Below are positions 19,272 through 57,000 of a DNA stretch of 64,000 nucleotides, piece by piece. The notes under the pieces were generated by a model, which worked only from the letters and a program-made list of their open reading frames with translations, searched no databases and had not been told where the DNA came from. Origin of the DNA: Sphyrna mokarran (lineage: Eukaryota); the NCBI GenBank assembly GCA_024679065.1, contig JAGIQG010000004.1, positions 54,250,001 to 54,314,000 of the forward strand, written 5' to 3'. The first letter of the stretch is position 1, and each line of letters starts with the position of its first letter. The position numbers and the translations under genes were made by a program.

Positions 19272-20832
19272 TCATAAATATCTTACACCTGCAAACAGTA
19301 TTTAGATTCTCAACTTCTTTCTTTGTCACATTCACTTCAGCATACAATGGGCGTTTGTTTTGTTTAAGTTTTGATGGGTCCTTGGAATCAGCAAGCTGCA
19401 AAGTGGCATATATCAGCTTCTTATCTCCACCTCTTTGTTTAGCCCGTTAAAGTAATATTTAATATCATTGTAAATCCATCGTCCAATCATTATTGAGACA
19501 ATTGACATTTTAACGAAAGACTTATGGAATTTCCTTCCATTAGTTCCAATTTCAGATTGTAATCGGATTTTGGTTTGGCTTCCTTTCCCTTTTCTGCAGC
19601 CCTCCCCCAAATCTTGTTGAAATTCCATTTGAACTTTCATGTAAAATTAATTCTTCTGTTAATATAGCTCATTGAAGAAAACAGATTAATTATTTGACTA
19701 AAATAAAAAAAAGTAATTCCATGCTGCTCTTTAAGGCAGTTGGGAAAGCTGATAGGACACAAGATTAATTTAAGGCCCAATTGTCTGAACATCGATAGTC
19801 GCAGTGCCCTGCTTATCTCACGGAGGAAGGCTCTGGGTCACATTTTTCATTCGCCTTACCGCCATTCCCACTAATCTCGTGATCTCTGGGACTTGAGGCA
19901 AAAATGACGAACTTGTTTGAAATCAGCCGACAGAGCACAGTTGGTAGATTAAACAAGAACCTTCCTATTTCCTGCATCTCAGTGTGGTATTACATAATAT
20001 TGATGCCATTACAGTAAATGACCTAAGATGTACCTGGGAATATACGATGCTCTCCTCCCTTTGTCTGGGGTTTGCCTTTTTCCTGGTGTCAATTTTGACT
20101 GTGGCAGAGCCAGGCTGTTGTCTTGTTTTGTCTGTAAAATAGATATTTTACGCATGTCATTGAAGAATTTCTTGTTTCGTAGTTGGGACAAGCATTATTC
20201 CAGGCAGACCCGAAAAAGAAACGTGGATAATATTGACTCTGATTTTTGTGTAAAACCGATTACGAGCCCGCAGCCTGATTAACATCTCTCCCGATTGCTA
20301 TTTCCAACCAAGTCAGTAAGAGAAATGTCAATTAATAAGGATTTGTTGAAATCTGTCCCATAAAGACAAAACCAATCCCCTCAGATTCTGAACAATTAAT
20401 CAATATGTTGTAATGTATAGTCATATCGTAGAATCCATACAGTGCCATTCGACCTATAGAGTCTGCAACCATCACAATCCCACCCAGGTTCTATCCCCTT
20501 AAATCCACCTAATCCCCGCTAATCCGCTGAAATTAAGAGGTAATTCACTTCACTGCATATCTCTGGAATGTAGGAGGAAAGCTGAGTACCCGGTGGAAAC
20601 CTAAACCAACGTGGGGAGAATATGAATGTACAAACTCCACATAAATAGTTACCCGACTGAACCCGGGTACCTGGCGCTGACCACCTAGTTGACTATCTTT
20701 CACCTCAATCCGTCAGTCCTGCCTGAGAATAGATGGTGTGCTCTTTCTTGTGTTTTGGTTTGGAGGGGCCTTTTTCTTCTCGCAGGCTTGAGTAGCGTAG
20801 GCGTCAATGTTCTCATCTGGCCTTTGTCTAAC
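19272..20832 (-). pseudogene. Three tandem homologous cytoplasmic exons with ITIM/ITSM-like Tyr motifs, all disrupted
   Basis: Exon 20832-20723 (110 nt; AYAT, TIYSQ; GC donor). Exon 20131-20034 (98 nt; LA-ATV, IVYSQ). Exon 19443-19272 (LIYATL, PLYAEV, TV-AGV; acceptor GG instead of AG). Confidence 0.72.
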
Positions 20833-21360
20833 CTGTAAAAATAAGACCCAAATTGAAAGTGGCGACTCTGCCTCTATAGCCAGCTACTGTCAATTCTAAT
20901 TAATTCTGTCAATGTAAATATGCAGACAGTAAACGATAAAACTAATTTGCAAGTGCACTCTCTTCCTTCTCGACTATAGTATTCAATATCGAACAATAGG
21001 GTGGAGAGTATTTGTTTAATCAGTTCAAGGGACGTTGGCTTCGCTGGCTACGCTAACGTATATTGACAGTCGATAATTGCACTTAAACCGCCCCAGTCGG
21101 TGTTGGGTACGTGCGTTTCCGGTATTTTTAGGGAAGTCCTCCCACGATTCTGACTCAGCAACAGTGAAGGAACTGCGATATTTTTCCAAGCCAGGATTTT
21201 CAATGGTTTAGAGGGGAACTTCAACGTAGTGTTCCTATATATCTGGCAGCTTTGAGATAGGGCGAGTTGGTGCTGCTGGAGAGAGAGATCAGTCGGAAAG
21301 AAAAGCAGAACTTCTTCAGATAGGCATTCCTGGAAGATAAATGGCAGTGAAGTAAACATT

Positions 21361-27080: not shown

Positions 27081-30000
27081 GTTTTTTTAAAAAAACACAC
27101 ACTGAGTCTTAAAACTATAAGCAATTTGAACTACACTAAAATATTGAGGTTAGCCCAAAAAAATTTTAATTCTGAATGGTAACAAACCAAATGCAGGTTT
27201 AGGAGCCTTGTGTTCCCAGTTGGTGGGAAAATTGTTTATTTATGACTAATTTTGCATGGGAAAGATGTTGCCTTCCTTCTTAGCAAGAAATCTGGAAGTT
27301 CGAGTATGAGACTTTTAGAATCATTGTTGACTGTCGTAGCTCCAGGCTCACTGTAATCTTGGTGATAAGTGAGTCCTTGGCTGTATTATCCACACTTGCA
27401 TATAGAATCTTGCCTGTCTTGAATCTGTATGTCTATAGTGTTGCCCATCACCCTGGTAGAATGGAATGTTAGAACATCACCTTTGGCAGATGTAGGATGC
27501 AATGAAAAGTGCTTCTGGTAGGATTGCCGTAATCCTATATAATTAAACTGCACTGAAAACATTGCAATTTATACAATGTTTTGCCTTAAAATTGGTTGGT
27601 GCCTCGAGAGAATTGTAAGGATAGTAAAGTAAGAATAGAGCTATCTCTAGTGGGAGTGATTTTAAAAAAAATACTTTAGTATACAGCACCTGACTTTATA
27701 TAGTCCTGCTGATTATCACTTGTTTTGCTGTAGCTTTGACAACCTAAAAGAACTAAACAGTTGGTTATACCTTTTGTGGTTTCCGTCCATCTCTGTCTTC
27801 TCGGCCCCTGTTTCTTATCACCTTTCCACCTGTTCCCCAGTGCCAAATAAAGATTTAAAACTGATCTCCATTTTCAGGAAAGTAACCCTGTGAAATTTCT
27901 TAATCTGTGTCTCCAATCCCTCTATTCTTAGTTATGGAATCTGACCATGGTTCCTGTATCATCTAACCCATAGAAATTAGTTGATTTACAATGTTTATGC
28001 ACAAGGTTCACTAATGTGCTTAGCCAGTTGGCATATCTTATATCACTGCATTGAAAATTGCAGTGGTTAGTACTGCTGTCTGTGCCAGAGACCTACATGT
28101 GATTCCTTGCGTGGGTCACTGTGTGGAGTTTGCACATCGTCGCAATGTGGGTTTCTTCCAGATGATCCAGTTTCCTTCTACATTCTGAAGATGTGCTGGT
28201 AAGGTTGAACATGCTAAATTGCCCCATAGTGTCAGGGGGTTAGAAGGGCTATGAGATAGGTCCTGGGTGGGATTGCAATTGGCCACCTCCTGCACTGTAG
28301 GAATTCTATGACAGCGCAGGTGGTGTCTGTTAGCTAAAATGTTTCCTTGACCCTGTTGGATCTTTTGGGTTGACTAACTGAACTGTACTTCCCTGGGAGC
28401 AGCACAAAAATGAAGCAATTTTTCAGTAATTGCTGTCCATAAAGTATTCTGATTAGCCTAGTTATGTTTTCTCCTTTTTTAAAAGGTAGGATTATATTGT
28501 TGCAGGCAACAGGCTGATCTGTCCCTCTTTTGAAACTAGATAGCATATTCTTGGGTTCTATTAAATAGTTTGAATTTTGCAGAATGGTGGTGCATTGAAG
28601 TTCCCATTATCCTTTGCCACATTATTGGTGATTACAACACGTTTGCTGTTGCTTCAAACAGAACAAATTTTAAAAAGAAAACTGTTAAACAAAAATATTT
28701 GTTTTATTGCAGTTGAATTGATTGGCACCTAACGCTTCATAAGGAATCTCCAAATCTGATCTCAAACCATGGAAACTCAATTTTAAGAACTATCATAAAC
28801 TGACAGTATAAATCTATATGACTTGGTTGATATTGTTTCAAACTTGAGCAAATTTATGACATGCTACTCAAAGAAATAAGATATTTGAAAGCCTTCTTGG
28901 TATGGAAAAAAACACTGATATTAGACTTGTTTCATTGGATAAGTGACCAATTCTCTTGTTTTACTACCTTGGCTTTGTAGATTCTCACCATTATTCTGTA
29001 CTTTAATTGCAATAAATGAAACTGTATGGTTAATGAACAAGTATCAGGAAGCCTTGTGACACAGTGGGCACCTGCTTCTAAGGCAGAAGCTCTGGGTTCA
29101 AGTCTGATCCAGGAGTTGCTTGTCAAGAAAGGTTGGTCAAGGAATGATGCTAAATAAGTTGAGTAACTTGTGAATGCTTAATGTACACCAATGGTAGACA
29201 GTAAAAACAGGAGAAATTTCCATCACATGGTCATCCACGTGATGGAAATTAATTGAAGCCTCTACTATCACTACCCACTTGGGATTGAACATAATGGCAT
29301 ATTATTAGAACAACAGACTCCTTGGAGGGCTAAATAGCTGGTGTCTGTCAGACTGGTACCAATAGCTGGATTAATCCCCAGATTGGAATGGATTCCTTGC
29401 TGTGAAGTCAGAGTGCTGTAGATTAGATCTGCCTTTAGGCAGAGTTGAGGAATGAAATACCTGGGTCTACTTCTATAAAAAGCTCAATTTTGTGTTGTTT
29501 TAAGATTTTCAACTTCTCTCTCTATGTCATGTTTATTTCTGCATACTCTACATGTTTGTCTTGCTGTTTAAATTTTGATGCTTTCTTGAAGTGAGCGAGC
29601 TGCAGAGTGGCGTAAGTCAGCTTGTTATCTCTGCGTTGTTTAGTCTGTGAAAGCAATATGTAATATTTGTTAACTCATCAGCTCATTACTTGAGGCAATC
29701 AGGTTTTTAAAAGTTTTCTCTCATTTCAAGTCACAGTTAATAAGAACACAGCCCATCAAGTTTAGAGCAATTTAGTTCCCTTTTCTCTTATGCTAAAGAA
29801 AAGTGACCATCCAATTTCTTTTTGAAATTATTGGTCTCTGTTTCCCTTTATCCCTGGCAGCCCACAAACTCATCTCCAACCTGTTCTTAATCTCCACCCC
29901 TCTCCCAAGTCCCTTGCCCAAAAACCTCATTCTCATACCACCAGTTAATGGAAACACCACAATGAATCTTTTCTCCAAGGAGAGAAATGCTAGCTTTTCC

Positions 30001-33000
30001 ATGCATAGAACCATTTTACATTTCCCCCGTAGGGCTCGCACATACTAATATGTGCTGATCTGATCAGGCTGCAAAATCTGTGGCCTAACCAAAACTTGAT
30101 AAAGTTTTAATATTAAAACTGTGGAATCCATCTATGTGTGCACTAATTATCCAGACCCCAAACCCTCTCTATCCTATAACCCTGTGTCTTCAGTATCCCT
30201 AACTTACATAATCTACTTTTCATGTTTTACTAACTAATTTCTTACGATGTCCTGCACTACCACCTTCAAAGATTGATATACATAGAATCCCAGCTTCCAG
30301 TTCTGCACTCTGTTTAGAACTGTGCCAGTACATCTCCGGTATTTATCCCTATCCCTCCTGCCAAAGTCCAGCATCTTGTGTTTTTAGATCGCATTTTGCC
30401 ACTAATCTGCCTATTCTGCTATTTGTGTCCTGAAGCAGCCCATTAAAACTCATCCTTTGTTAGCTCCTCCAAATTTGGTATCATTGAGAATTGTTTGTAT
30501 TGGTTTTATTTTGGGTCTCTCTCCTCTTCAAAGTCTTTCCCCAAATCGTATTGGTATTCTGTTTCAATCTTAATGTCTCCTGCTATTATAACCAATTTAA
30601 GACAGCAGATGCATACTTCAATTAAAATAGCAGACAAATGAATTTCATACTTGCAGACTGGTGGTTACTTGGATGCTGTGATAAGGCTACATATGGGGTC
30701 ATGTGATAGGAATGCAGGTAGATGCACCATGCTGTGCAGAGTATTCCATAAACTGTTTTGTTTTCATACTTGGTCACCAGTTATTGAAACCCCCAAAGAA
30801 TATTTGAATTGCTGGTGTTACAATTGGGGCTTAAGACTGAATTTTGCATGAGCCCTGCCAATTTATCTGATCTATCTACTCCCTGGATCAAGGTTTCAAG
30901 ATCCTACTTACTCACTGGGTTCCTCTTCCCTCTTCCCCCATCCCCCAATCTCTGGGTCATGAGGCAAAAATGAATGCTAGTTGAGATCAGTCAACACCAT
31001 CAGTTAGTTGATTTTAAATGTGGGGCCTTGCCAATCACTGCAGCTAAGTGTAGTACCACTTAACAATGACAGTGTTTCAATTAATGATCTGAGCTGTACT
31101 TGAAATATACAATGCTCTTCTCTATCTGTATGTGTTTGCATTTTTCCTAGTGCTGGTTTCGACAGGGGCATTGTTATGTGAGTTTCTTATTTTGTGGTTT
31201 AGAACATCATCATAGCCAGCCCCCAATAGGAAACAGAGTCCAGTGTCCTTTTTATATTGCCTCTGATTGCTTTTTGCAACTAAATCAGTTGGAGATATGC
31301 TGGTGCTTTATTGGACAGAATAAAATGAGTCCTAAGTCAAACCAACCTGTGCAATTTCTTTCATGATTGTGATAACAGAGTATTGATCTTGAATGAAAAT
31401 AGTTTGGATATTAATTGGCCCTACATGGGAATAGGTGGCGTGCTCTGTCTCATGTCTCCGTTTGAAGAATCCATTCTCATGTTAGTACCGTCAATTAATT
31501 TAGCTGCATGCAAACACAATCATTTCTTTTTACTACATTTTTCTTCTTTGACCTTATTTGTTCTTGCACTCCTTTGTTTGTATGCTCTGCTCCTGTCAAA
31601 TTGTGGCTATCATTTCTCAAATCTTTAACCTGCACTATTGCTTTGTTCTTTTTTTCAACTCTCAGAACCAGGCACCTTCCTAATATCTCTGATTATGATA
31701 CAAAATGTGTTAACAAGCACCTGGGCATATAGGAACCTCCTATTTTTGGAACAAGTTGAATTATGAAAATGTTATCAATTGGTAGAATATGTCACAATAA
31801 ATACTAATATTTATCTTACCCTTATAAATAATAGAATGCCTACAGTGTACAAACAGGCCATTCCACCCATCAAGTCTACACTCGAATCTCAACATATGAT
31901 CTTTCTCTGGCCCATCCCACAGCCTATCTCCATAACCCTACTCATTTACCTCACTAATTCCCCTAACCTACATGATTTGGGATACTAAGAGATACTTTAG
32001 CATGGCCAGTTCACCTAACCAGCACATCTTTGGACTGTGGGCAGTAACTGGACCATTCAGAAGAAACCCACACAGATAGGGGAAGAATGTGCAAGCTCCA
32101 CACATTCACCCAAAGCTGCAATTGGTCTTAGGTCCCTGGTGCTTTAAGACAGCAGTGCTCACCACTGTGCCATCCTTAATAATAAAAGCACGTGGCAAAA
32201 AAGAAGGAATTGATGCTAAAACATTATAAATCACTAGTAAGTTGTCATTGCTGTATCATGCCCCATTCTGGGAACAACATTGTTGGGAGTGTTAGAAAGC
32301 AGGGGTATGTTCAAGTGATCTCAATCTGTATTGCTGAATATTAGAAATAAGGTATAGATTTATGTGAGTCTACTTTAATGTTTCTGTATAAGAAAGGATA
32401 AAACTTCGATTAGATTATTGTTAAACAAAGGTGCATATGTGTACGGGGGTGGGGGGAATGGAGGCATTGGTTTCATTTAAAACTGTTTCTATTGTCCTTA
32501 GAGAGTTTACAGTATGAAAAGTAAGCAAACGTTTCAAGAAAGATTGAGTTTTTGTTTAGCAACTAGGTCGTCTTTAGGGAAGAAAAAGTGCTTGTGCTTT
32601 TAATTTAACTGAACTCATGGCAGGTAGATCTTAGCAGCTAGAGAGACAACAGCTCACTCAGTTCTGTCAGAAAGAAGACAGTGAAGTAATGGGCATGAAT
32701 GCAAGTCCCAGAAACTAAAAAAAAGTTAGTTCTAGAAACCAGAGATTGAAAAGAAAGGTTGCAGGAAACTGAGGTTTTGAGAACAAGACTGAAAAAATTG
32801 AACAATTGTACTATTTATTGAAGTTAAGGACGGAGCTGAAAAGTACAGCTTAGTGAGAAACCAAATAATCATAAGATTGGGGATATCTTGTTGCAGCCTG
32901 TGAAGCAATAGTTGAAACAATTGTGAAGCAGTTGGTGGTTCGATTACTGAGAGATTATGTGGAAAACTTAAAAATGCATGGCTATTGAAGACATATGAGT

Positions 33001-33506: not shown

Positions 33507-36500
33507 TCAACTTCGTTCTTTAAAGATGCAACAAAACAAAAGATTTATACCCTTCAATGAAGCACTATTCACCCGCCGTTTCTGTCTTAACAGTTCAACT
33601 GGGCATAACAAAATAAGAATTTGCGGTGAAATAAGAAAACTTCTTACCAGCTGAAGCTTTAAATTTGAGTCTCGTCAAAAAAATTATCAACAGTACAACA
33701 GCCAATGCGCCACCTGCACATCCCAAAATGAGTGGAAAATGGTTTCCTGAAATAGCGACAAGATCAACAAATGATTGAAATCAGAAAGTTCCGAACACAG
33801 CGAGATTTATACACAATCTTGGGTCTAGCGCGGGAGGACGCGGTGCAATGTTGTCTTTCCCGAAATTGTGTCCATTTACTCTGTGTGGGGACCGATACTT
33901 TTATTTCTATAGGCAGTAGCTATAAAAGGATTATAACGTTGTCCAAACAACAGTAACGCTATTTATGGAGGAAACTAATCTATAAAGGCGCAGGAAATTT
34001 CTCTCTAGACCTGGGGGAATTTGCGGTCAAAGTAAAGGGGTTTATATTTGTGCCACACCAGACAGACGCGCACCGGCTACAAGTAATAGCAAAGCTTTTC
34101 ATTCTTCGGCACTGACAACCAGAGAACACACACTGCAGCTCTTAGTAGGTAACAAGAACAGTTTGCATTTAACATTCTAAAATGCCCAAACGCAGCGTTA
34201 TCAAACACAGTCAAACCACATGAATAATATTTTGACAGCTGGAGGTAGAGTTGAGGGAACGTCGAAAATGAGAGTTGAAAAGGCGGGGATACTCAAGAGC
34301 GAGAGTTGAATTCAGATAGCGGAAGGCATTATGCGGACATAACGATTTTACCTTACATGCAATTCAAATATTCAGGATATAAAAGTGACTACTAAAACTG
34401 ATCATTTTTATATGTACGTTTATTTCACTCGGCAAGAATTTGACGAGAAATAAGCACATAAATTAGAGCACCATAGGAAAGTTAAAGCACAGAAGGAGGC
34501 CAATCGGCTCATCTTGTCCATGTCAGCTCGTGGACACGAGGTGCCCTTTCCAATTTCACCTTCCTGCGTCCGGCCCTTAGCCCTGTGGCTTACTTAAGGT
34601 ACAGATCTATGTACCTTTAAAAAAAGTTTACGGTCTCTGCCTTCACCAACTCAAGCAGCGAATTCCAGACCCCATCTTTCTTTGTGTAAAAAAAGATATT
34701 CCTCGTGTCTTCTCTACATCTTCTGCCACTTATATTAAATCCATGACCCCTGTTTCTAGAATTCTCCGTCAAGGGAAACGATTTCATCCTGTCCATTCCA
34801 CCTTTTCCTCTCATAATTGTGCACACCTCTATCAAGTTACTTATCAGGCTTTTTTCTCAGGAAAATAAATTCAGCCCATCCAATCTCTCTTCATAACAAC
34901 ACATTTCTAGCCCCGGCAATCTCTAGTTTTAGGTCTTTTCAGGAAAATATTCTCTCTCCTCCAGCTACAAACTATCTTGATCATTTTAATTCGTTACTAT
35001 TGATGTGACATTGTAATTAAATAAAGTCTACAATCACCTTGTAAATTCAAGTTTGAACAGCTGCCAGCTACATTAATAATAAATAATACAAATCGGAGTC
35101 TTTACCCCCGCTCGTTTCTGTAAATGTTTCGAATCTTACCTTGCAATACGGTGTAGCTGACGCTGGCGGGCATCTTAAGGGAGATATGAGATGCCAGACA
35201 TGTATAAACGACTCTGTTTTGGAGAGGTAGTGCTTCTTCCAAAGAACTGGTGACCTCAAAAAGACCATCCACTGCCTCATTTCTCACAGTTTGTATTCCG
35301 GCCAGAATTTCCACACCATCTCTGCGCCAGGAGATGTTTAAACCCTCCGGGTAAAATGCAGCCGTTTTGCACTTGAATTTTAGAGAAGTCACTGTATTCT
35401 CTTCAATCCGAACGATTTTCAGTGGTGTTGGAGGAACTATTAACAGGGGGAAGAATCATTTTTGAATTGAAAAGAGTAAATTCTCAATTGCCGAACCTCG
35501 AACGCTTTTATACTCATACTGAGATAATAGTTATCATGCTGTCGCGTTTTTTTAAACTTCGGGCGTGCATTTATTTTATATAATGTTGTACGACGCTCAG
35601 CAAAATTGTCGGACGTTTTGAAAGCGGATCGTTCTCCCATAAATGATTACAATCAGGGAAGAAAGACATGATAGAGTTAAAGCCGGAATTAAAGCCATGA
35701 TGTGCCGGCGTTGGACTGGGGTAAATATAGTAAGAAGTCTCACAAAACCAGGTTATAAATGAAAAATAAATGAATATTTGCCAAATAAACCTGTTGGGCT
35801 TTAACCTGGTGTTGTGTGACTTCTTACAGAATTAAAGCAGCAGATTCTGGCGCGGGATTGTGTTCGGCAGCAGTGACCTGCATTCAGATTCCGGTCCGAA
35901 TGTATCACGGGGAGCACCAAAAAGTCAGCACGAACATTGGGTTCTACTCGGGTTTTTCTGTAAGAATCATTGTAGCACTAAACATTGCGTGTTCGTTTGA
36001 AAAATGACCCACTTCAAATTTTTAATTATTAACCAACACAGCACGGGAAACAGGCCCTTCGGCCCAACGAGCCCGCGCCACCGTAATACCAAATACATTA
36101 TCCTATTTTAATATTCCTATATAATAATATATATATTAATCCTAATTTGGAAAATTTTCACCATAGGGACAATTTGTTACCCAATCAGCCTAAGAGCGAA
36201 TTTTTGTGTTTCCAAACGTATTTTGTTGTACTGATTAATGTTAAGATGCGTGAAATCAAAATACATCTCATTTCTAAATTGGCACCAGACAAGATATAGT
36301 TATATGTATAGATTAAAACCTATGAGTTACCATTGATTACACAACATTTCAATGCCCCTGGTTGAGGTTTCAGATCATGCACCTTTCACCAAAACATCTT
36401 TCTGTAGGCCGGATGCGAATGTTGGAGTATTTTGCAAGCCAGGATAATTTTTGTTAATTATATATCGCTATGCAGATCACAACACCCATGAATTAATTCC

Positions 36501-39152
36501 AGAGATAAAAACAGGTCATGTTAAGTAAACTCAGCTAGTTTGGCTGAGTTTTCATTTCAGATTTCCAGCATCCGCAGTATTTTGCTTTTATTTGACTGTG
36601 CAGTTTGCCCCTCTGCAATTTTACTCAATCTGCTGAGCACATTTTTTCTGGAGAAGATCCTGCTTCGAACAGTCCAAAGTTACAATTTTCTGATGTGAAC
36701 CGCTCTATCTGTCCGCGCTATCAGTCTTCTACCTCAGCTTCCTTCTGTTCATGGGGACTGTACACAGAAGTAATGAATTACATATACCAGGTGTATAGAA
36801 ATGTTGGGTAGTATCCATTCCCCTCTTCACCAGTTGTGTGTGCATCATAGAAAATCCAGTTGGCGTACCGCAGAAGTTCAAACAAGGGCATCGGGCACTT
36901 TAACTGTCCTGAAAAGTCCAGGACCCGGGGTGGAAACCAGCACTGAGGGAAAGATCAAAATCCTCCTTCTCAGTTGATTGTAGGATTGCATTGTGGAAAA
37001 ACCTTGGAATTTCAGACAAGTTACTAATGAACACAACTACAATATATAAACTATTATCCTAGGAACAGGGGCTCATTCAGCCCGACTCATTGTGCTCTGC
37101 CAACCTTGGTGATAGTGATTGGCACTGCTGTCTCACGACGCTAGGGAGCGGAGTTCAATTCCGGCCTCGGGTCGGTGTGGAATTTGCATGTTCTCCCCTT
37201 GTCTGGGTAGGTTTCCCCCCAATGCTCCGGTTTCCTTCCCACTCCAAAGATGTGCTGATTAGATGGGTTGGCCATGCTAAATCGCCCCTTAATGTTAGGT
37301 GGTTTAGCAGGGTAAAGACGTAGGGTTAGGGGGAAGGAGCCTGGGTGTCGATGCAAGTTCGATGGACAAATACTGTAGGTATTCTATGGCTCTGCCTGAT
37401 CTCTAACCTAACTCCATTTGTCCGACTTAATTCGTTCTTAGCAAAAATTGAGCCGTCGCAAATTTAAGGCAATGACGTAAAGAAAGTGTTACATCGGCAA
37501 TTTCGAACAGCCGGCGGAAAAGGAAGCTGATTTCGGAAATATTTGTTGCTGTAGTAGGGGAATTTTCACCTGTATTTATCATGAAGGCACTAAGAGTGAG
37601 GGTTCAGGAAAGATTTGTTGGAGTTAATCAGAGTCAAAGGACTTAGGTTATGTGCAGAGACTGAAGAAGCTACGATCGTTCTCTTTAGGCCTGATAGTTT
37701 TAAGAGGCGGGCGGTGAATTTTGATAAAGTCAGTAAGCAAAAAGTGTTCTGTGACACCAGAGTCGGCAACCAGAAGATGTTTGGCAAAAGAACGCAAGGA
37801 TTCTTTGAGTGGAACGTAATTACAGTCTAGTACCTATTATTGTTATCATATTGTTCAGCTTCAATCGCGAGCAGTGAGTGCAGGGGATCCCGATTCATTT
37901 TCGCTTCCTGGTTAGATCAACTAACTCGGCAGTGAGAGCATTTCGGAAGGGCCCTCAACAAACTGAAATGCCGTGAATAACCGCTGTTACTTTCCTCGAA
38001 ATCTTCTTCTTGCAATTACCTTTGCGGGGCAAGGAGGTGGGGGTGGCGCGGGGGAGGGGAGTGATGTTTACTCCGTGTAGTTCTCACCCCGCACGCCGCC
38101 AATATTCCTTCCTCTTTGGTGTAAATTAAATCTTTGAAGTTTCAAAGAAGGTTTGAGCTGGGAGGTGTTAAGATTGCTTACATTGTTCAATTGTGACGCC
38201 ATTGTGGCGAGAAAGAATCAGACCCTGACATTTCATTACAACATCAATGCAAAATACTGCAGAAGCTGGGCATTTGAAATACAAACGGAAAATATCGAGA
38301 ATGTTCAGAGGTCGGGTAATACCTGTGTAGAGAAACTGAGTTAACGTTTCGGATCATTTCATCATCGACATGAAATGTTAACTTTGTTTTCCTCCACAGA
38401 GAGAACTGACCTGTTGAGGTTATTTCGTGTATTTCCATTGCTTAATTTCAAAATAAAAATATCCACTATACATCGAAGTCAGTGGAAGACAATCCAATGT
38501 TCTCTAAAAATAATTCGTTAAAAGCAGCTTTTCCTCCAATGATAAAAAATCAAATGGCAGATATGGCGCCGAGCTGAAATCCTCCCGTTTACAATTACAC
38601 CTACCGTATACAGTAAGCTGGGTGCCAGTTCCAGTTTCAATAGATTTTTCTGGATATTTTACTTTACAATAATACACTCCGGAATCTGCAAAAGTCACAT
38701 TCAGGAATTCAAACGAACTACTTCCCTTGTTCGTATTAAATCGCTTTCTATTGTCTGGTTCGAGAAAGGATTGTTCTCCACGTCTCCACCAACGAACATC
38801 GGGCATATCTGGAAATAAGGGAAATGTGCAGAGTATGGAAGCATTCGCGCCTCTGTTCACCTTCAAGTATTTAGGGATCTGAACCACTTTGGCCCAAGTT
38901 ACTCTGGCGGCTGTCAGGAAAGAAACAAAGGCGGTGATGTAACAGATAAATAAAAATAACTGAGAGAAGTAAATTATAAAAACAAGCAATCGAATTAGAG
39001 AAGCACAATATCCAATTTTACAGTGCGTAACAGCTGTAGAGTATTTTAAATTAGGACCTGCCGTTGTGAAATCGGCAGGATCTAATAATGAATATACCTG
39101 GCCAAAACACGCCCAGAAGAACCATGTAGTGCACTGTGACTTGTATCCACAT
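33507..39152 (-). CDS. Gene B: intact type I membrane IgSF receptor, leader-V(J-joined)-C1-TM-short tail (SIRP/NKp30/VJC1-like), ~255 aa
   Basis: Four phase-1 GT-AG exons splice in frame: leader 39152-39098, V 38910-38605, C1 35436-35140, TM 33746-33648. A putative terminal exon 33517-33507 adds ERS*. No stops or frameshifts. The last exon is uncertain. Confidence 0.88.
33648..33746 (-). CDS. Gene B transmembrane exon
   Basis: Acceptor ctatttcag, donor gtaaga, 99 nt. Encodes GNHFPLILGCAGGALAVVLLIIFLTRLKFKASA, a hydrophobic helix followed by basic stop-transfer residues. Absent from the ORF track. Confidence 0.88.
34470..34920 (-). mobile_element. CR1 3' fragment in the gene B C1-TM intron
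   Basis: IEVCTIMRG...RGHGFNI...VWNSL. Confidence 0.75.
35140..35436 (-). CDS. Gene B C1-set Ig exon
   Basis: Acceptor ctgttaatag, donor gtaaga, 297 nt. Translation includes VPPTPLKI, FKCKTAAFYPEGLNISW, DGLFEVTSSL and YTCLASHISL, giving the C1 motifs CxxxxFYP and YxCxxxHxSL. Confidence 0.93.
35696..35827. mobile_element. Collapsed Penelope-like inverted repeat in the gene B V-C1 intron
   Basis: gtaagaagtctcacaaaaccaggtta and taacctggtgttgtgtgacttcttac form inverted arms. Confidence 0.7.
37108..37390 (+). mobile_element. HE1-type V-SINE (gene B intron)
   Basis: Same head and V domain as 11316-11620. Confidence 0.85.
38605..38910 (-). CDS. Gene B V-set Ig exon with germline J-like G strand
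   Basis: Acceptor cctgacag, donor gtaggt, 306 nt. Translation includes KVVQIP, ASILC, VRWW, DSGVYYC and TGTGTQLTVY. Confidence 0.93.
39098..39152 (-). CDS. Gene B leader (signal peptide) exon
   Basis: Encodes MWIQVTVHYMVLLGVFWP plus one G, followed by donor gtata. 55 nt, phase 1, separated from the V exon by a 187-nt intron. Confidence 0.85.
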
Positions 39153-39214: not shown

Positions 39215-39390
39215 ATAGATTCCATCGTTAAATATAAGAAACGCGTGACCATGACATGAGAGATCACATGATTGAAACAGCGTATTGCGTTCGTTTAAAT
39301 TGGGGCGGGATCTGTGGAGAGGGAGGGAGGAGGGGAGGGGAGAGGGAGGGAGGAGGGGAGAGGGGAGGGAGGAGGGGAGAGGAGATCCGC
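39215..39390 (-). promoter_or_regulatory. Putative promoter of gene B
   Basis: TATA-like TATATTTA on the minus strand (~39229-39236), TGACATGA and CACATG motifs (~39250-39270), GC box GGGGCGGGA (39302-39310) and a purine tract (39316-39385). Confidence 0.4.
39316..39385 (+). repeat. Pure purine (GGA/GGGA) low-complexity tract
   Basis: About 70 nt of only G and A with repeated GGG/GGGG runs. Confidence 0.9.
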
Positions 39391-50387: not shown

Positions 50388-53044
50388 ACAAAGAACAAAG
50401 AACTACACACCACTGGAAACAGGCCCTTCGGCCCAATGAACCCATGTCGCCATTTAACATTGTGAGTGCCCTCCTCTATCTATGACCTTTGTCTATGCCT
50501 ATTGGGGAAGATTGAGGGAAGACGAATTTAGGGACAATTTGTTACACCAATCAGCTTAACAGCATGTTTCTGGGGCGTGGGAGAAAACCCACGCAATCAC
50601 GGGGAGAATGTGCTAACTGTCACAGACACTGGCCCAAATCCATGTATCTGCACAGCAAACGGTGATAGTCACTGAGCTGTCATGTTGCCCGTCAGATGGT
50701 CCAGTTTAAGTGTACACCAATGACGTGAAGCAGTAGGCAACTCTTGAAGCAGCATCAAAGAGCAGCCCTCGCACGATCCACCTTGTGTATGCCCCTTGTT
50801 GGATAACAAATCGGGCTGAATCACCTGTGAAGTAAAAGAAAAGACATTAATAAACATGCACGACTTAGACAGATGTTTACGGAATCCCCAGAAGCTCAGA
50901 AGTAAGACAAGTGAGCCATGAAATATGTTGGAAGGTTCATAGAAATCAGTTGATTCCCAGGGATGTCCCAATGCTCTTGATCTTTATTTAGAACAGTCTC
51001 CTGTATCCCTCCATCTCTGCTCCGCTCATGTGCCTATCTAAATAAATCTTAAACAACTCTAGCATTCTTGCCTCCACCACCTTGCTTGGCAGTGCATTCC
51101 AGGTCCCCATTGTGTAAAAAACCTCCCTCTAACATCCGAATTATACCTTGCCCCACTGATCCTAAGTCGGCAGCCCCTCGTAATTTTTGTATCCAACCTA
51201 GGAAAAGGTTTACCAGTGTTCACTCTATCTATACCCTTCATAATCTTATACATCTCTATTAGATCTTCCCTTATTCTCCACCTTTCTAAGGAGAACAGCC
51301 CCAATTTACCAAATTTCTCCTCATAGCTCAGTCCTTCCATACCAGGCAGCATCTTGGTAAACCTCCTTTGCACTCTCTCCAGGTTCTCCACGCCCTTCTT
51401 GTAGTAAGACTACCAGAACTGGATGCAGTACTCCAAATGTGGATGAACCAACGTTCTGTACAACTTCAACATTAGACGCCAGCTTTCATACTCTATACCC
51501 CTCCCTATAAAGGCAATCATACCATAGGCCTTCTTTGCCACCTTCTCCACCTGTACTGCCACCTTCAAGGACTTGTATACTTGCACCTCCAGGTCCTTCT
51601 CCATTTCTATACTCTTAATAGGCCTACCATTTATTGTGTAACACCCCCATCCTACATTATTTCTTCCAAAATGCATCACCTCGCATTTATCTGGATTAAA
51701 TTCCATCTGCATTTCTCTGCTCAATATACCAGCCTATCTATATATCCTGCTGTATTGCCTGATACTGCTCCTCACTATTAGCAAGTCCAGCCATCTTCGT
51801 ATCATCTGCAAACTTGCTGATCACACCACTTACTCCCTCTTCCAAGTCATTTATGTATATTACAAATAGCAAAGGTCCCAGTACTGAGCCGTGGGGCACA
51901 CCACTAATTACAGACCTCCAGCTAGAAAAGGACCCTTCCACTTCTACTCTCTGTCTCCTGTTACCAAGCCAGTTCTCAATCCATCTGGACACCTGTCCTT
52001 GTATCCCATGAGCGTTAACTTTTTCAACTAACCTCCCATGAGGGACTTTGTCAAATGCCTTACTGAAATCCATGTAGGCGACATCCACGGCTCGTCTTTC
52101 GTCGATCGTTTTTGTCACCTCCTGAAAAATTTCTACCAGACTCATAAGGCAGGACCTCCCCTTTACAAAACCATGCTGCCTATCACTAATCAAATTGCCA
52201 CACTCTAAATGCGTATACATCCTATGAATCCTTTCAACATCTTCCCTACTACTGACAGCAAACTCACTGGCCTATAATTACCCAGGTTATTCCTACTACC
52301 CTTTTTAAACAACGGTACCACGTTCGCTATCCTCCAGTCCTCTGGGACCTCACCTGTGTCCAACAAAGAGACAAATATTTGCGTCAGAGGCCCAGCAATT
52401 TCATCTCTCGTCTCCCTAAGCAGCCTAGGATAAATGCCATCAGGCCCCGGAGATTTATCAATTTTAATACCACCTAAAAACCCAAACACTTCCTCCCTCG
52501 TAATAGATATTTCGTCCAACGAGTCTACAACTCTGTCCAAGACAGTACCAGACAACAAGTCCCTCTCCTTCTTGAATACTAACACAAAGTATTCATTCAG
52601 GATCTCCACCATTCCCTTGGAGTCTAAGCACAGTTCCCCTCCTCTGTCCCTAAGAGAACTGATTTTTCCTCTAACCACCCTTTTGTTCCTAACATAGGAG
52701 TAAAATACCATTGGATTTTCCTTAATCCTGTCTGCCAAGACCATTTCATGCTCCTTTTCGCCATTCTAACTCCTTGTTTGAGCTCCCCCCTACTCTCCCT
52801 GTATTCCCCCAATGCTCTCTCCATTCCCAGTTGCTTAGACCTAACATACGCCTCTCTTTTCTTCCTGACCCTCCTCAATCTCTCTAGTTATCCGCAGCTC
52901 TCTGATCCTACCTTTCCCATCCTTCCTCTTAACTGGTACATGTCTTTCCTGCAACCTTTTCAGCTGTACCTTAAAAGACTCCCACATGCCGAACGTGGAC
53001 TTACCCTCAAACAACCTCTCCCAATCTGTATCTATATCAGTATG
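50388..53044 (-). mobile_element. CR1 LINE ORF2 fragment with 3' region and V-SINE-like tail, inserted in an older CR1
   Basis: Frameshifted RT ORFs from 52878 to 51059 (KSPGPDG, QHGF, DFSKAFD, FADD, HLEYCIQFW). (GTTCTTT)-type tail at 50388. Confidence 0.88.
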
Positions 53045-53918: not shown

Positions 53919-56900
53919 TTCTGCACCTGAACCGGAGGGGTACCAATATCTTGGGGGGTAAATTTACCAGTGCTATTCGGGGGGGATTAAACTGATTCGG
54001 GGGGGATGGGAACCTGAATTGTTGTGCCAGTATACAGGAGGATGTGAATAGGGAGGTCACGGATAAGGTTTCTAGGTTGCAGCAGTATAGTGGCAAACGG
54101 GAGGGGGGTTTGAAGTGTGTATACTTTAATGCGAGGAGCATACGCAATAAGGTGGATGAACTTGCAGCCTGGATTGGTGCTGGGGACTTCGATGTTGTGG
54201 CCATTTCAGAGACGTGGATAGAGCAGGGGCAGGAATGGTTGTTGCAGGTTCCGGGGTTCAGATGTTTCAGTCAGAACAGAGGTGGTGGTAGAAGAGGGGG
54301 AGGAGTGGCATTGTTAGTTAAGGACAGCATTACGGTCGCAGAAAAGACGTTTGATGTGGACTTGTCTGCTGAGGTAGTGTGGGCTGAGATTAGAAACAAG
54401 AAAGGAGAGGTCACACTGTTGGGAGTTTTTTATAGGCCTCCAAAAAGTTCCAGAGAAGTAGAGGAAGGGATTGCAAAATTGATCCTGGATAGGTGTGAAA
54501 GTGTAAGTGTGAGTGTAAGTGTAAGTGAAACTGCAAATGTGAAAGTAACAGGGTAGTTGTAATGGGGGACTTTAAATTTTCTAACATCGATTGGAAAAGC
54601 TATAGTTCAAGTACGTTAGAGGGGTCAGTTTTTGTTCAATGTGTGCAGGAGGGTTTCATGACTCAGTTTGTAGATAGGCCAACAAGAGGTGAGGCTATAT
54701 TGGATTTGGTACTGGGTAATGAACCAGACAGGTGTTAGACTTGGAGATGGGTGTGCACTTTGGTGATAGCGACCACAATTTGGTTACGTTTACCTTAGTG
54801 ATGGAAAGGGACGGGCATGTACCGAATAACAGTAGTTATAGCTGGGGGAAAGGTAGTTATGAGGCTATTAGGAGAGATTTAGGATGCATACGGTGGAGCA
54901 GGAAATTGCAGGGGCTGGGGACATCTGAAATGTGGAGCATATTTAAGGAACAGCTTCTGCATGTCCTTAATGAATATGTACCTGGCAGGCAGGGAGGAAG
55001 TGGTCGAGTGAGGGAAGCATGGTGTATTAGGGAAGTTGAATCTCTGGTGAAGAGGAAGAAGGGGGCTTATATAATGATGAGACGTGAAGGGTCAGTTAGG
55101 GCAATAGAGAGCTATAAATCAGCCAGGAAGGAGCTAAAGAGGGAGTTGAGAAGAGCTAGAAGAAGACACGAGAAGACTTTGGCGGATAGGATTAAGGAGA
55201 ATCGTAAAGCTTTTTACAGGTATATAAATAATAAAAGATTGGTTAGGGCAAGATTAGGGCCAGTCAGAGATAGCAGTGGGAAGTTGTGAGTGGAGCCTGA
55301 GGAGATAGGAGAGACACTGAATGAGTATTTTTCGTCAGTATTCACGCAGGAGAAAGACAGTGTTGTCAGGGAGAATACTGCGATACCAGGTTGTAGACTG
55401 GGTAGGATTGAGGTTCATAAGGAGGAGGTGTTAGCGAATCTTGAGGGTATGAAAATTGATAAGTCCCCTGGGCCAGATGGGATTGACCCTAGGATTCTCT
55501 GGGAGGCTAGAGAGGAGATTGCAGAGCCTTTGGCTTTGATCTTCATGTCGTCGTTAGCTACAGGTATAGTGCCGGAAGACTGGAGGATGGCAAATGTTGT
55601 CCCTTTGTTCAAAAAGGGGGGTAGGGACCATCCTGGAAATTATAGACCGGTGAGCCTGACTTCTGTTGTGGGCAAGGTCTTGGAAAGAATTATAAGGGAT
55701 AGGATTTATAAGCATCTAGAGAGAAATAAATTGATTAGGGATAGTCAGCACGGTTTTGTGAAGGGTAGGTCGTGCCTCACAAACCTTATTGAGTTTTTGA
55801 GGAGGTGACCAAAGAGGTAGATAAGGGTAAGGCAGTTGATGTAGTGTATATGGATTTTAGCAAAGCGTTTGATAAGGCTCCCCATGGTAGGCTACTGCAG
55901 AAAGTGCAGATGCATGGGATTGAAGGTGATTTAGCAGTTTGGATTAGGAATTGGCTAGCTGATAGACGACAGAGGGTGGTGGTTGATGGGAAATATTCAA
56001 CCTGGAGTGCAGTTACAAGTGGTGTACCTCAAGGATCTGTTTTGGGGCCACTGCTGTTTTTCATTTTTATAAATGACCTAGATGAGGGTGTAGAGGGTTG
56101 GATTAGTAAATTTGCTGACGATACCAAAGTGGGGGGAGTTGTAGACAGCGAGGATGGATGTTACAGTATGCAGAGGGACATAGATAGGTTGCAGAGCTGG
56201 GCCGTGAGGTGGCAAATGGAATTCAATACGGATAAGTGTGAGGTGATTCACTTTGGTACGAATAACAGGCATATGAAATATAGGGTTAATGGAAGGACCC
56301 TTAATAGCGTTGTTGAGCAGAGGGATCTTGGGGTACAAGTACACAGCTCTTTGAAAGTTGGCACCCAGGTTGATAAAGTTGTTAAGAAGGCGTACGGTGT
56401 GTTAGCTTTTATTGGTAGAGGGATTGAATTTAGGAGCCGTGAGGTTATGTTACAACTATACAAAACTCTGGTGCGGCCGCACTTGGAGTATTGCGTACAG
56501 TTCTGGTCGCCGCATTATAAGAAAGATGGGGAAGCATTGGAAAGGGTGCAGAGGAGGTTTACCAGGATGTTGCCTGGTATGGTGGGAAGGCCTTATGAGG
56601 AAAGGCTGAGGGACCTGAGGTTATTTTCATTAGAGAGAAGAAGGGTACTCGGTGACCTAATTGAGGCGTATAAGATGATCAAGGGATTGGATAGGGTGGA
56701 TAGTGAGAGCCTTTTTCCTCAGATGGTGATGACCAACACGAGGAGACATAACTTTAAATTAAGAAGTGGTAGTTATAGGACGGATGTCAGAGGCAGGTTG
56801 TTTACACAGAGGGTGGTGAGAGCGTGGAATGCACTGCCTGCAGCAGTTGTGGACTCGCCTACTTTGGGGGCATTCAAATGTTCAGTGGATAGGCATATGG

Positions 56901-57000
56901 ATGATATTGGAATAGTTTAGGTTAGAGGGTCCACTGGCTGGCGCAACATCGAGGGCCGAAGGGCCTGTACTGCGCTGTAATGTTCTATGTTCTATGTTCT
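53919..57000 (+). mobile_element. Young 5'-truncated CR1 LINE: ORF1 esterase C-terminus plus near-complete ORF2 (APE + RT), inactivated
   Basis: ORF1 SGNH-type end LHLNRRGTNILGG. APE motifs NARSIRNK, ISETW, YRPP, GDFK, SDH. RT motifs YRPVSLTS, DFSKAFD, GVPQGSVLGP, FADD. (TTCTATG)n tail ends at 57000. Lesions near 54500, 54730, 55288 and 55800. Confidence 0.95.

What the first reader, a model, noticed from the sequence alone, without database searches (positions are those of the whole stretch)
33507..39152. Intact non-rearranging antigen-receptor-like gene: germline-joined VJ exon plus a C1 exon
Seen: one exon encodes a full V domain including the J-like G strand (YYC...GTGTQLTV), followed by a true C1-set exon and a TM exon, all phase 1, with no RSS at the V/J position. 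Known: C1-set domains are largely confined to Ig/TCR, MHC, beta-2-microglobulin, tapasin, SIRP and B7-type molecules, and single-exon VJ domains occur in NKp30, NITR, SIRP and CD8-type genes. Inference: this is a shark V(J)-C1-TM receptor with the architecture proposed for the pre-RAG ancestor of TCR/Ig chains, probably covered only by automated 'SIRP-like' annotation.
Basis: partly seen in the sequence, partly recalled or inferred. Interest (0 to 1): 0.85.

Follow-up and report, generated by a model that had tools for sequence, protein, structure and literature searches.

The report
Shark non-rearranging VJ-C1 receptor gene
This is a real shark gene for a membrane receptor with an antibody-like variable domain that needs no DNA rearrangement plus one constant domain; it is one of a large, barely studied shark and ray family of paired immune receptors.

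Summary
On the minus strand there is a leader exon (39152-39098), a single-exon V domain with a J-like G strand (38910-38605), a C1-set exon (35436-35140) and a TM exon (33746-33648). All junctions are phase 1 and there is no RSS.

It is not a lone relic. It belongs to a family found here only in cartilaginous fish: 97 stored proteins, some of them isoforms. Public names are automated and inconsistent: SIRP-like, NCR3LG1-like, tapasin-related-like, Ig-lambda-like. The nearest protein is catshark XP_038662025 (V 75%, C1 71%).

The family is a paired-receptor system. Near-identical ectodomains carry either an uncharged TM with an ITIM-rich tail, or a charged-flank TM with a short tail.

This gene has the inhibitory-type TM, but its tail looks eroded. 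An intact two-ITIM exon lies at 29644-29522, in the wrong splice phase.

The V is short, without a C'' strand, and folds like shark VNAR.

No RNA test was possible.

The scan's first readers noted at least eight similar genes elsewhere in this genome.

The parts
39098..39152 (-). Leader exon (ATG at 39152, 18 codons plus 1 base, phase-1 donor)
   Evidence: It aligns with the N-termini of P0005, P0008, P0009 and P0011, and by eye with the leader of P0001.
38605..38910 (-). Single-exon VJ-type V domain. It holds the end of the split leader, Cys27, Trp40, the DSGVYYC motif (D75-C81), and a G strand GTGTQLTV.
   Evidence: Pfam V-set E 4.8e-12. Family V HMM 136.8 bits. 75% identity to P0001. Model pLDDT 92. 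Foldseek top matches are VNAR and TCR V-alpha. No RSS.
35140..35436 (-). C1-set constant-type domain exon
   Evidence: Pfam C1-set E 2.2e-06, above the cut-off. Family C1 HMM 134.3 bits. 71% identity to P0001. Model pLDDT 85. Foldseek top matches are MHC II beta-2 domains.
33648..33746 (-). Stalk and uncharged transmembrane exon of the family's 'inhibitory-type' kind, ending KFKASA plus 1 base (phase 1)
   Evidence: 82% identity to Mustelus P0055 and 76% to S. torazame P0054. 75% to Heterodontus P0011.
33507..33598 (-). It follows a 49-nt intron, reads ...QKRRVNSASLKG... and stops at 33509-33507. It is probably the degenerate homologue of the family's short 'K(K/R)NS(V/E)EAGQ.EE' exon.
   Evidence: Compared by eye with P0007, P0011, P0054 and P0055. 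No tblastn hit of its own.
31425..31481 (-). Remnant of the first tyrosine cassette (HENGFFKRRHETEHATYSH), with three in-frame stops in the nine codons just upstream
   Evidence: 66.7% identity to P0055 over 18 aa. Frames shown.
29522..29644 (-). Intact terminal tail exon. It has a good acceptor (TTGCTTTCACAG|), two ITIM-like motifs (LTYATL, VEYAEI) and a stop. Its acceptor is phase 0, so it is out of phase with the phase-1 donors upstream.
   Evidence: 74.5% identity to P0055 over 55 aa..

Best explanation
The locus encodes a type I membrane glycoprotein: signal peptide, one short V domain with a J-like G strand made from a single non-rearranging exon, one C1-set domain, and an uncharged transmembrane helix. 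It belongs to a large family of paired immune-type receptors, found here only in cartilaginous fish and clustered on one chromosome per species.

In this family, closely similar ectodomains are joined to one of two back ends. One is an uncharged TM followed by a tail of two to five ITIM/ITSM-like tyrosine motifs. By analogy with SIRP-alpha and other ITIM receptors, these would recruit SH2 phosphatases and inhibit the cell. The other is a different TM flanked by a conserved basic and a conserved acidic residue, with a short tail. That would fit an adaptor-coupled, activating or decoy partner.

The window gene has the inhibitory-type TM. Its nearest V relative, catshark P0001, has the other TM type.

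Its own tyrosine tail looks uncoupled. The short exon after the TM runs into a stop. The first cassette is degenerate. The intact two-ITIM terminal exon 4 kb downstream is in phase 0, whereas the upstream donors are phase 1. So the most likely product is a ligand-binding, tail-less (non-signalling or decoy) version of an inhibitory receptor, as seen in several relatives.

Shown: exon anatomy, domain types, family membership, and the two TM/tail types. Inferred: ligand binding by the V domain, ITIM signalling, adaptor pairing, and which 3' exons are used.
For: - Exon anatomy and splice sites.
- Domain identity.
- Family range. 28 of 28 homologues of P0001 are chondrichthyan. In the profile search, 27 of 40 hits are chondrichthyan family members and the other 13 are reptile, teleost or frog multi-Ig proteins.
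- Exhaustive profile search: 251 proteins at E<=1e-30. Of the 20 looked up by name, 15 are family members by the criterion, and all 15 are chondrichthyan.
- A clear score gap separates 97 stored proteins (V >=60 and C1 >=50 bits) from outsiders (C1 <=41 bits).
- Two TM/tail types. Of 97 proteins, 72 have a recognisable TM. 13 of these are the charged-flank type, with tails of 8-41 aa. 59 are other types, of which 33 carry at least one ITIM-like motif, 24 carry at least two, and 26 carry none.
- Paired design. Catshark P0005 and P0007 differ at 16 of the first 218 positions (my count), then have unrelated TM and tails.
- Trees. The window V groups with P0001/P0004 (support 100/99), inside a 22-row shark and ray clade (100/95) that holds both TM types. 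The window C1 falls in the matching 21-row clade (quick tree).
- Tail analysis.
Against: - No transcript evidence. No RNA run was listed, so no junction is confirmed.
- An in-frame route to the ITIM exon exists on paper. It needs a 26-nt micro-exon using a CGG|GTGAAT donor, then the cassette remnant, then the terminal exon. A signalling tail is therefore not excluded.
- The terminal exon keeps an open frame and both motifs. That fits continued use as well as recent decay.
- The ITIM and adaptor functions are inferred from motifs only.
- My TM classification uses a simple hydropathy and regular-expression rule, and the set includes isoforms of the same genes.
- Public gene models in this family are automated, and some are visibly wrong. 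P0002 reads into the intron. P0006 and P0009 lack a TM.
Confidence: 0.72

Rival explanations
1. It is a fully functional inhibitory receptor. The true mRNA continues past 33507 and joins, in frame, the terminal exon at 29644-29522, which carries two ITIMs (LTYATL, VEYAEI), possibly through the cassette remnant at 31.4 kb.
For: - The terminal exon has an intact acceptor, an open frame and both motifs, and is 74.5% identical to Mustelus P0055.
- An in-frame path exists if the exon after the TM ends at the CGG|GTGAAT donor (my reading).
- The TM is of the type that carries ITIM tails in relatives.
Against: - That path needs a 26-nt exon after a 49-nt intron.
- Both strong donors upstream (GCTG|GTAAGA and AAGG|GTATAA) are phase 1, while the terminal acceptor is phase 0. 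By my reading, that join gives one codon and then a stop.
- The first cassette has three in-frame stops just upstream of its conserved part.
Confidence: 0.2
2. It is an unexpressed, recently disabled duplicate (pseudogene). Its ectodomain exons are still open only because too little time has passed.
For: - The tail is eroded.
- The window also holds a clearly broken paralogue, with V intact at 3615-3917 and C1 truncated by a stop, and an orphan broken tail at 19.3-20.8 kb. Gene death is therefore common in this cluster.
- The translated intron upstream of the V exon is about as similar to P0002 (17 of 27, my count) as the V exon is to P0001 (75%). This hints at weak constraint on V.
Against: - All five exons are open, with consensus splice sites.
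- Every invariant family residue is kept in V and C1.
- Both exons score as high as annotated members against the family HMMs.
- Fast V evolution is usual for immune receptor families.
Confidence: 0.12
3. The family is simply the cartilaginous-fish orthologue of a named family: SIRP, or the published shark NCR3 (NKp30) family. The gene would then be an ordinary member of something already described.
For: - 10 of the 28 proteins are auto-named SIRP-alpha-like or SIRP-beta-like.
- Human SIRP-alpha (2wng) is the best match of V plus one C1 in a single stretch to the family profile in the PDB: 100.4 bits in all, with the best stretch covering V and C1 together.
- SIRP V domains are the best full-length V matches to the window exon.
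- The tails are ITIM-rich, like SIRP-alpha.
- A C1-less Callorhinchus isoform is auto-named NCR3-like.
Against: - SIRPs have two C1 domains and this gene has one.
- A skink SIRP-like protein scores only 27.7 bits (V) and 30.3 bits (C1) against family HMMs, where members score at least 60 and 50.
- SIRP C1 domains are not among the 60 best PDB matches of the C1 exon. B7H6, MHC and Ig C domains are.
- Human NKp30 matches only the F-G strands, at 17.6 bits.
- Other first-reader notes place V-only NKp30-like clusters on other pieces of this genome (unchecked).
- The shark NCR3 paper could not be read.
Confidence: 0.25
4. It is a germline-joined immunoglobulin light-chain or TCR gene, a product of RAG activity in the germ line as known for some shark Ig clusters.
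For: - 3 of 28 family proteins are auto-named Ig lambda-1-like and 1 is auto-named TCR-beta-like.
- Light chains score about 75-92 bits against the family profile.
Against: - The gene has a TM of a non-TCR type, and relatives have ITIM tails.
- The C1 is closer to B7H6 and MHC C1 domains than to Ig or TCR C domains.
- Both V exons in the window are contiguous and there is no RSS in the window.
- The family is distinct and old, reaching the chimaera Callorhinchus.
Confidence: 0.02

Closest known systems
SIRP family (SIRP-alpha, -beta, -gamma)
   Same: Non-rearranging V domain with a J-like G strand, followed by C1-set domain(s). Paired design, with ITIM-tailed and short-tailed charged-TM members. 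Best V-plus-C1 profile match in the PDB. It is the commonest automated name in the family.
   Different: One C1 instead of two. The V is much shorter, with no C'' strand. Sequence similarity is weak (about 26-30 bits per domain). Orthology, synteny and CD47 binding are untested.
UrIg and UrIg2 (shark non-rearranging 'antibody-like' genes; PMC12227049, sections 4 and 7 read)
   Same: Cartilaginous-fish genes with a single-exon VJ domain, a split leader and C1-type domains. UrIg2 also has a TM. UrIg2 (9dmx) gives the highest summed score to the C1 exon and ties for highest with the family profile.
   Different: According to the paper, UrIg has three C domains and is secreted, and UrIg2 has nine to eleven. 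The high PDB score is a sum over three C domains of 13.8, 14.1 and 21.4 bits. UrIg2 is not among the 60 best matches to the V exon. The window gene has one C1 and belongs to a multigene paired-receptor family.
NKp30 (NCR3) and the shark NCR3 family
   Same: Non-rearranging VJ-type domain on a membrane receptor. There is F-G strand similarity. One C1-less isoform in the family is auto-named NCR3-like.
   Different: By recall, NKp30 has no C domain and an Arg in its TM. Human NKp30 matches only the last 40 residues of the V. The paper on shark NCR3 genes is not held, so I could not compare.
B7H6 (NCR3LG1)
   Same: V-C1-TM layout. Human B7H6 C1 is the best single-domain PDB match of the C1 exon, at 31.3 bits. 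Six of 28 family proteins are auto-named NCR3LG1-like.
   Different: The lead is small (MHC class I alpha-3 scores 30.8 bits). B7H6 is absent from the 60 best matches of the V exon. The family V carries the G.G..L.V J-type motif.
Shark IgNAR variable domain (VNAR)
   Same: Closest predicted fold of the V exon, TMq 0.76-0.83. Both are short V domains. The lack of a C'' region in VNAR is recalled; for this gene it is seen in the model.
   Different: VNAR is assembled by RAG rearrangement and sits on a five-C-domain secreted or membrane heavy chain. Sequence identity is only 21-27%. This is a resemblance of fold, not evidence of descent.
[quoted passage not shown] 2019; known to me only from its citation in PMC10751288)
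   Same: Described in the citing paper as MHC-linked VJ genes. By recall, the layout is VJ-C-TM.
   Different: Not testable here. No sequence could be fetched and the paper is not held.

Membership tests
Ig C1-set domain | Match to the C1-set profile above the curated threshold | tested here: met
   PF07654, 28.4 bits against a cut-off of 21, E 2.2e-06
Ig C1-set domain | Seven-strand C-type fold resembling Ig, TCR or MHC constant domains | tested here: met
   Model pLDDT 85 with strands A-G. The top Foldseek matches are almost all MHC class II beta-2 domains, TMq 0.72-0.85.
Ig C1-set domain | FYP...W in strands B-C and Y.C.V.H in strand F | tested here: met
   AAFYPEGLNISW and VYTCLASH in the exon translation. 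That these are the hallmark motifs is recalled.
VJ-type (non-rearranging antigen-receptor-like) V domain | V-set domain and J-like G strand (G.G..L.V) encoded in one exon, with no RSS | tested here: met
   One open exon, 38910-38605, ending GTGTQLTVY. V-set E 4.8e-12. 0 RSS patterns. No heptamer in the exon.
VJ-type (non-rearranging antigen-receptor-like) V domain | Full-length V with C' and C'' strands | tested here: not met
   54 residues between the Cys. The model has no C'' strand. I-set domains are the best sequence matches over residues 12-93. The nearest folds are short VNARs.
VJ-type (non-rearranging antigen-receptor-like) V domain | Split leader, with a phase-1 intron inside the signal peptide | tested here: met
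   The leader exon ends after 18 codons plus 1 base, and the V exon begins with the last leader residues.
SIRP family | V domain followed by two C1-set domains | tested here: not met
   One C1 exon lies between the V and TM exons. tblastn finds no second C1 in the 5 kb gene.
SIRP family | Sequence membership (scores like a member) | tested here: inconclusive
   Human SIRP-alpha scores 100.4 bits against the family profile, the best match of V plus C1 in one stretch. A skink SIRP-like protein scores only 27.7 and 30.3 bits where members score at least 60 and 50. No tree with authentic SIRPs could be built.
SIRP family | Paired ITIM-tailed and charged-TM members | tested here: met
   Met at family level. 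33 of 59 uncharged or other TM members have ITIM-like motifs. 13 members have a charged-flank TM and short tails. P0005 and P0007 form a pair.
SIRP family | Binds CD47; orthologous locus | not testable with these tools
   No binding assay is possible, and no flanking non-family genes lie in the window.
Rearranging or germline-joined Ig/TCR genes | RSS-flanked V and J segments in the gene or in close relatives | tested here: not met
   0 RSS in the window. Both family V exons here are contiguous.
UrIg/UrIg2 | VJ domain followed by three or more C1-type domains | tested here: not met
   One C1 exon. The per-domain scores to UrIg2 are 13.8-21.4 bits.
NKp30/NCR3 | Single VJ domain without a C domain, and a basic residue in the TM | tested here: not met
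   A C1 exon is present, and the hydrophobic TM core (PLILGCAGGALAVVLLIIFL) has no charged residue. The definition of NKp30 is recalled.
PRARP | Sequence relationship to chicken PRARPA/B | not tested

The most novel reading that the evidence does not exclude
The family this gene belongs to could be an uncharacterised lineage of membrane-bound, single-C1, non-rearranging VJ receptors, found so far only in cartilaginous fish. It would descend independently from the same VJ-C1-TM precursor as TCR and Ig chains. That would make it a closer architectural stand-in for the pre-RAG antigen-receptor chain than UrIg/UrIg2 (many C domains) or NKp30 (no C domain). Its short, VNAR-like V might then show what the V domain looked like before the C'-C'' region (CDR2) was elaborated. 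The paired inhibitory and charged-TM design would suggest that the precursor was already an innate paired receptor.
Probability: 0.15. Interest if true: 0.8.

Novelty: new variant of a known kind. Interest (0 to 1): 0.5.

Why it matters
Non-rearranging genes that join a VJ-type V domain to a C1 domain are the main living clues to what the RAG transposon split when antibodies and T-cell receptors arose. Two such shark genes, UrIg and UrIg2, have recently drawn attention for that reason (PMC12227049).

This locus shows that cartilaginous fish also keep a large family with exactly the layout of one TCR-like chain: one V(J), one C1 and a TM. It is present from chimaeras to sharks and rays. It is organised as paired inhibitory and charged-TM receptors, and in public databases it sits under a mix of automated names.

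Proper domain trees, synteny and expression data for this family could test three things: whether it is a SIRP relative, an NKp30/B7H6 relative, or an independent branch near the antigen-receptor root.

The single gene studied here is an ordinary member of that family and probably lacks a signalling tail.

Tried and rejected
**Searches that gave little**
- I looked for relatives of the V exon alone. The language-model atlas returned only generic V-set clusters, one of them called 'putative antigen receptor (fragment)'.
- I hoped the exhaustive profile search would reach named outgroups for a tree. Its 150 listed hits were filled by family members and by giant multi-Ig proteins whose many domains add up (hemicentin-like). 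Only one lungfish, one agamid and one skink protein came out as possible outgroups. No authentic TCR, IgL, NKp30, B7H6, PRARP or UrIg sequence could be stored. I therefore built no cross-family tree and make no claim of descent.
- The profile search with names scored only the 8000 candidates that share most words. Outside the family it brought turtle, lizard, snake, carp and frog multi-V proteins, which I did not pursue.

**Ideas rejected**
- Close kinship with UrIg2. Its top PDB score is a sum of three weak domain matches.
- A special NKp30 link. Human NKp30 matches only the F-G strands.

**Tests that could not be run**
- Chromosome linkage to the MHC. The white shark MHC is on chromosome 19 (legend of Fig. 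2 in PMC10751288, seen as a passage), but I cannot tell which chromosome the 193.5-Mb record of P0027 is. The window holds only family members and LINE elements.
- RNA evidence. No run was listed.

**Literature**
- Searches found no paper describing a cartilaginous-fish VJ-C1-TM/ITIM family.
- The most relevant papers are not held and were not read: Kinlein 2021 on shark NCR3, Flajnik 2012 on B7H6/NKp30, Ohta 2019, and Flajnik 2023 on UrIg. Fu 2019 on PRARP was not looked up, because I had no id for it. I therefore do not claim the family is unpublished.
- Supplements were not requested. Those of PMC12227049 and PMC10751288 may list such genes.
Full report
**What is there**

Reading the minus strand of 33.0-39.6 kb, with the ORF list and exon translations, gives a clean five-exon gene.

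- The leader exon runs from the ATG at 39152 to 39098. It has 18 codons plus one base and the donor CAG|GTATAT.
- The V exon is 38910-38605. Its acceptor is a pyrimidine tract ending CAG and its donor is ACG|GTAGGT.
- The C1 exon is 35436-35140, with donor CAAG|GTAAGA.
- The TM exon is 33746-33648, with donor GCTG|GTAAGA.

Splice contexts were printed. By my reading every junction is phase 1.

Each exon was analysed on its own.

**Domain identity**

- Pfam calls the V exon V-set (E 4.8e-12, 46.5 bits) and the next exon C1-set (28.4 bits, cut-off 21).
- The C1 exon folds with pLDDT 85. Its best structural matches are almost all MHC class II beta-2 domains, TMq about 0.72-0.85. It carries FYPE...ISW and YTCLASH.
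- The V exon folds with pLDDT 92. It has the canonical Cys27, Trp40, DSGVYYC, and a G strand GTGTQLTV inside the same exon.
- There is no RSS. The heptamer-spacer-nonamer pattern has 0 matches in the window. None of 13 bare heptamers (8.6 expected) lies in the V exon. One lies in the coding part of the leader exon, with no nonamer.

One correction is needed. The V is short. Only 54 residues separate its two cysteines and the model has no C'' strand. Over residues 12-93 its best PDB sequence matches are I-set domains, such as DCC at 45.6 bits. SIRP (26 bits) and TCR V domains (about 23 bits) are the best matches that run through the G strand. The nearest folds are shark VNAR domains and a TCR V-alpha.

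**It is a member of a large family**

The closest protein in 5.8 billion is XP_038662025 of Scyliorhinus canicula. Its automated name is 'tyrosine-protein phosphatase non-receptor type substrate 1-like isoform X2'. It is 75% identical in V and 71% in C1. Its leader also matches.

Searching with that protein gave 28 relatives, all from cartilaginous fish: sharks, rays and the chimaera Callorhinchus. Their automated names are scattered:

| Automated name | Count |
|---|---|
| SIRP-alpha-like | 8 |
| SIRP-beta-like | 2 |
| NCR3LG1-like | 6 |
| Ig lambda-like | 3 |
| tapasin-related-like | 2 |
| TCR-beta-like | 1 |
| uncharacterised | 6 |

- A profile search with names returned 40 proteins. 27 are chondrichthyan family members and 13 are reptile, teleost or frog multi-Ig proteins.
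- An exhaustive profile search of 1.84 billion representatives found 9034 proteins at E<=0.001, 2000 at 1e-10 and 251 at 1e-30.
- With domain HMMs, 97 stored proteins of 900 aa or less score at least 60 bits in V and 50 in C1. Outsiders reach at most 41 bits in C1. The 97 include isoforms of the same genes. Longer proteins were left out.
- The window exons score 136.8 and 134.3 bits.
- Of the 20 proteins I looked up by name, 15 meet that family criterion (6, 9). All 15 are chondrichthyan.
- The other five are a scallop and a teleost hemicentin-like protein, a lungfish B7-like protein, a Pogona protein and a skink SIRP-like protein.
- Members of one species sit on one large record. Examples are 99,651,266 bp in Heterodontus, 198,790,641 bp in S. 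canicula and 18,121,395 bp in Callorhinchus. The family is therefore clustered.

The scan's first readers noted at least eight similar 'VJ-C1-TM-ITIM' genes elsewhere in this same genome, two within 150 kb of this window. Those notes are unchecked, but they agree with what I see.

**Paired design**

The alignment and a simple classification show two back ends.

- Of 97 proteins, 72 have a recognisable TM.
- 13 of these have a TM flanked by a conserved basic residue on the outside and Asp/Glu-His on the inside, for example ...PRLVLGFLIILGLLGIIVDH.... Their tails are 8-41 aa long.
- 59 have other, mostly uncharged, TMs. Of these, 33 carry at least one ITIM/ITSM-like motif, 24 carry at least two, and 26 carry none.
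- Catshark P0005 and P0007 differ at only 16 of their first 218 positions (my count). After that they switch to the two unrelated TM/tail types. This is the hallmark of paired receptors.

In the V tree the window exon groups with P0001/P0004 (support 100/99). It sits inside a 22-row shark and ray clade (100/95) that contains both TM types. In the quick C1 tree it is sister, weakly (82), to the three catshark C1s, inside the corresponding 21-row clade (97).

**The 3' end**

The window's TM exon is of the uncharged kind that carries ITIM tails in relatives. It is 82% identical to a Mustelus asterias protein (P0055) and 76% to S. torazame P0054.

In relatives the TM exon is followed by three kinds of exon:
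- a short exon reading about G.K(K/R)NS(V/E)EAGQ.EE;
- one or more tyrosine cassettes;
- a terminal exon with two tyrosine motifs.

Heterodontus isoforms with and without the TM (P0014, P0009) show that the TM exon ends exactly where the window's donor lies.

The orphan tail in this window shows that cassette and terminal exons have phase-0 acceptors, for example CAG|GTT AGA CAA... and CAG|ACA AAA CAA....

In the window gene:
- The exon after the TM lies only 49 nt downstream. It reads ...QKRRVNSASLKG... and runs to a stop at 33507. Its only strong internal donor, AAGG|GTATAA, is phase 1.
- The first cassette survives only as HENGFFKRRHETEHATYSH (31481-31425), with three stops in the nine codons upstream.
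- The terminal exon (29644-29522) is intact. It has a good acceptor, LTYATL and VEYAEI, and 74.5% identity to P0055. Its acceptor is phase 0, so a join from either phase-1 donor gives one codon and then a stop (my reading).
- An in-frame route exists only through a 26-nt micro-exon ending at CGG|GTGAAT.

I conclude that the product most likely lacks the tyrosine tail, as P0007 and 25 other family members do. I cannot exclude the ITIM form.

PolyA signals lie about 690 nt below 33507 (32819), and at 29007 and 28708 below the terminal exon. They do not decide the matter.

**What it is like, and what it is not**

- Among solved structures, the family profile scores UrIg2 and a composite IgA model highest, at 117.9 bits each. 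For UrIg2 this is a sum over several domains.
- The best match of V plus one C1 in a single stretch is human SIRP-alpha: 100.4 bits in all, with the best stretch covering V and C1 together. Light chains follow at about 75-92 bits.
- For the window C1 exon alone, the best single domain is the C1 of human B7H6 (31.3 bits). MHC class I alpha-3 (30.8) and class II beta-2 (about 30) are close behind. The three UrIg2 C domains give 13.8-21.4 bits each.
- Human NKp30 matches a family V only over the F-G strands, at 17.6 bits.
- A skink SIRP-like protein scores 27.7 and 30.3 bits against the family HMMs.

So the gene works like a SIRP-type paired receptor and has the chain layout of a TCR or Ig chain. 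It fails the SIRP membership test on the number of C1 domains and shows no close sequence tie to any named family.

The UrIg2 paper (PMC12227049; outline, sections 4 and 7, and passages read) describes UrIg and UrIg2 as the non-rearranging antigen-receptor genes of elasmobranchs. It uses NCR3 as the other non-rearranging VJ gene. The word SIRP does not occur in it.

The paper on shark NCR3 genes, and the 2012, 2019 and 2023 papers of the same group, are not held. I cannot say whether part of this family has been described under another name.

**Surroundings**

The rest of the window holds the following.
- A second family member of another subfamily. Its V exon is intact at 3615-3917, with nearest relative Heterodontus P0096 at 66%. 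Its C1 is cut by a stop after its first half.
- An orphan tail at 20835-19315, with frame shifts, a GC donor and a lost acceptor.
- LINE reverse-transcriptase ORFs at 51.7-52.2 kb and 55.3-56.9 kb.

No non-family cellular gene was seen, so synteny cannot be judged from this window.

**Limits**

- No RNA run was listed.
- Function is inferred from architecture and motifs.

**Verdict**

The gene is an ordinary, probably tail-less, member of a large and apparently uncharacterised VJ-C1 paired-receptor family of cartilaginous fish. The family, rather than this gene, is the interesting object.

Noticed in passing
window 3615-3917 (-) and 1871-2011 (-): A second family gene of a different subfamily. 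Its VJ exon is open (ends IGNGTGSELHMF; nearest relative Heterodontus P0096, 66%). Its C1 exon keeps only the first half and then hits a stop.
   Followed up: partly
window 19315-20835 (-): An orphan tyrosine-motif tail of four exon remnants. It has frame shifts inside two cassettes, a GC in place of a GT donor, and a terminal exon whose acceptor AG has become GG. No V, C1 or TM exon was detected for it between 20.9 and 29.5 kb.
   Followed up: partly
window 51741-52744 (-) and 54732-56917 (+): LINE-type reverse-transcriptase ORFs (RVT_1, E 4.2e-20 and 1.1e-20), one on each strand. These are ordinary repeats filling the space between receptor genes.
   Followed up: partly
window 39300-39390: A purine-rich GGGAGG-type simple repeat about 150-240 nt upstream of the leader ATG. 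It lies where a promoter would be. Not analysed.
   Followed up: no
public proteins P0005 and P0007 (Scyliorhinus canicula): Ectodomains are about 93% identical, then the TM and tails are completely different (charged-flank versus uncharged). This is a textbook paired-receptor pair inside the family.
   Followed up: yes
public proteins P0043-P0048, P0051-P0053 (turtles, lizard, python): Reptile proteins with two to five tandem V domains are the best matches to the family V HMM outside cartilaginous fish (48-60 bits, against 27.7 for a skink SIRP-like V). Their identity was not pursued.
   Followed up: no
C1 quick tree versus V tree: The C1 domains of three S. canicula genes cluster together (96), while their V domains fall in different subclades. 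This suggests homogenisation of C1 within a species, or faster divergence of V.
   Followed up: no
public proteins P0006 (Chiloscyllium plagiosum) and P0063 (Amblyraja radiata): These family members have two nearly identical tandem C1 domains. The SIRP-like V-C1-C1 layout therefore arises by exon duplication within the family.
   Followed up: no
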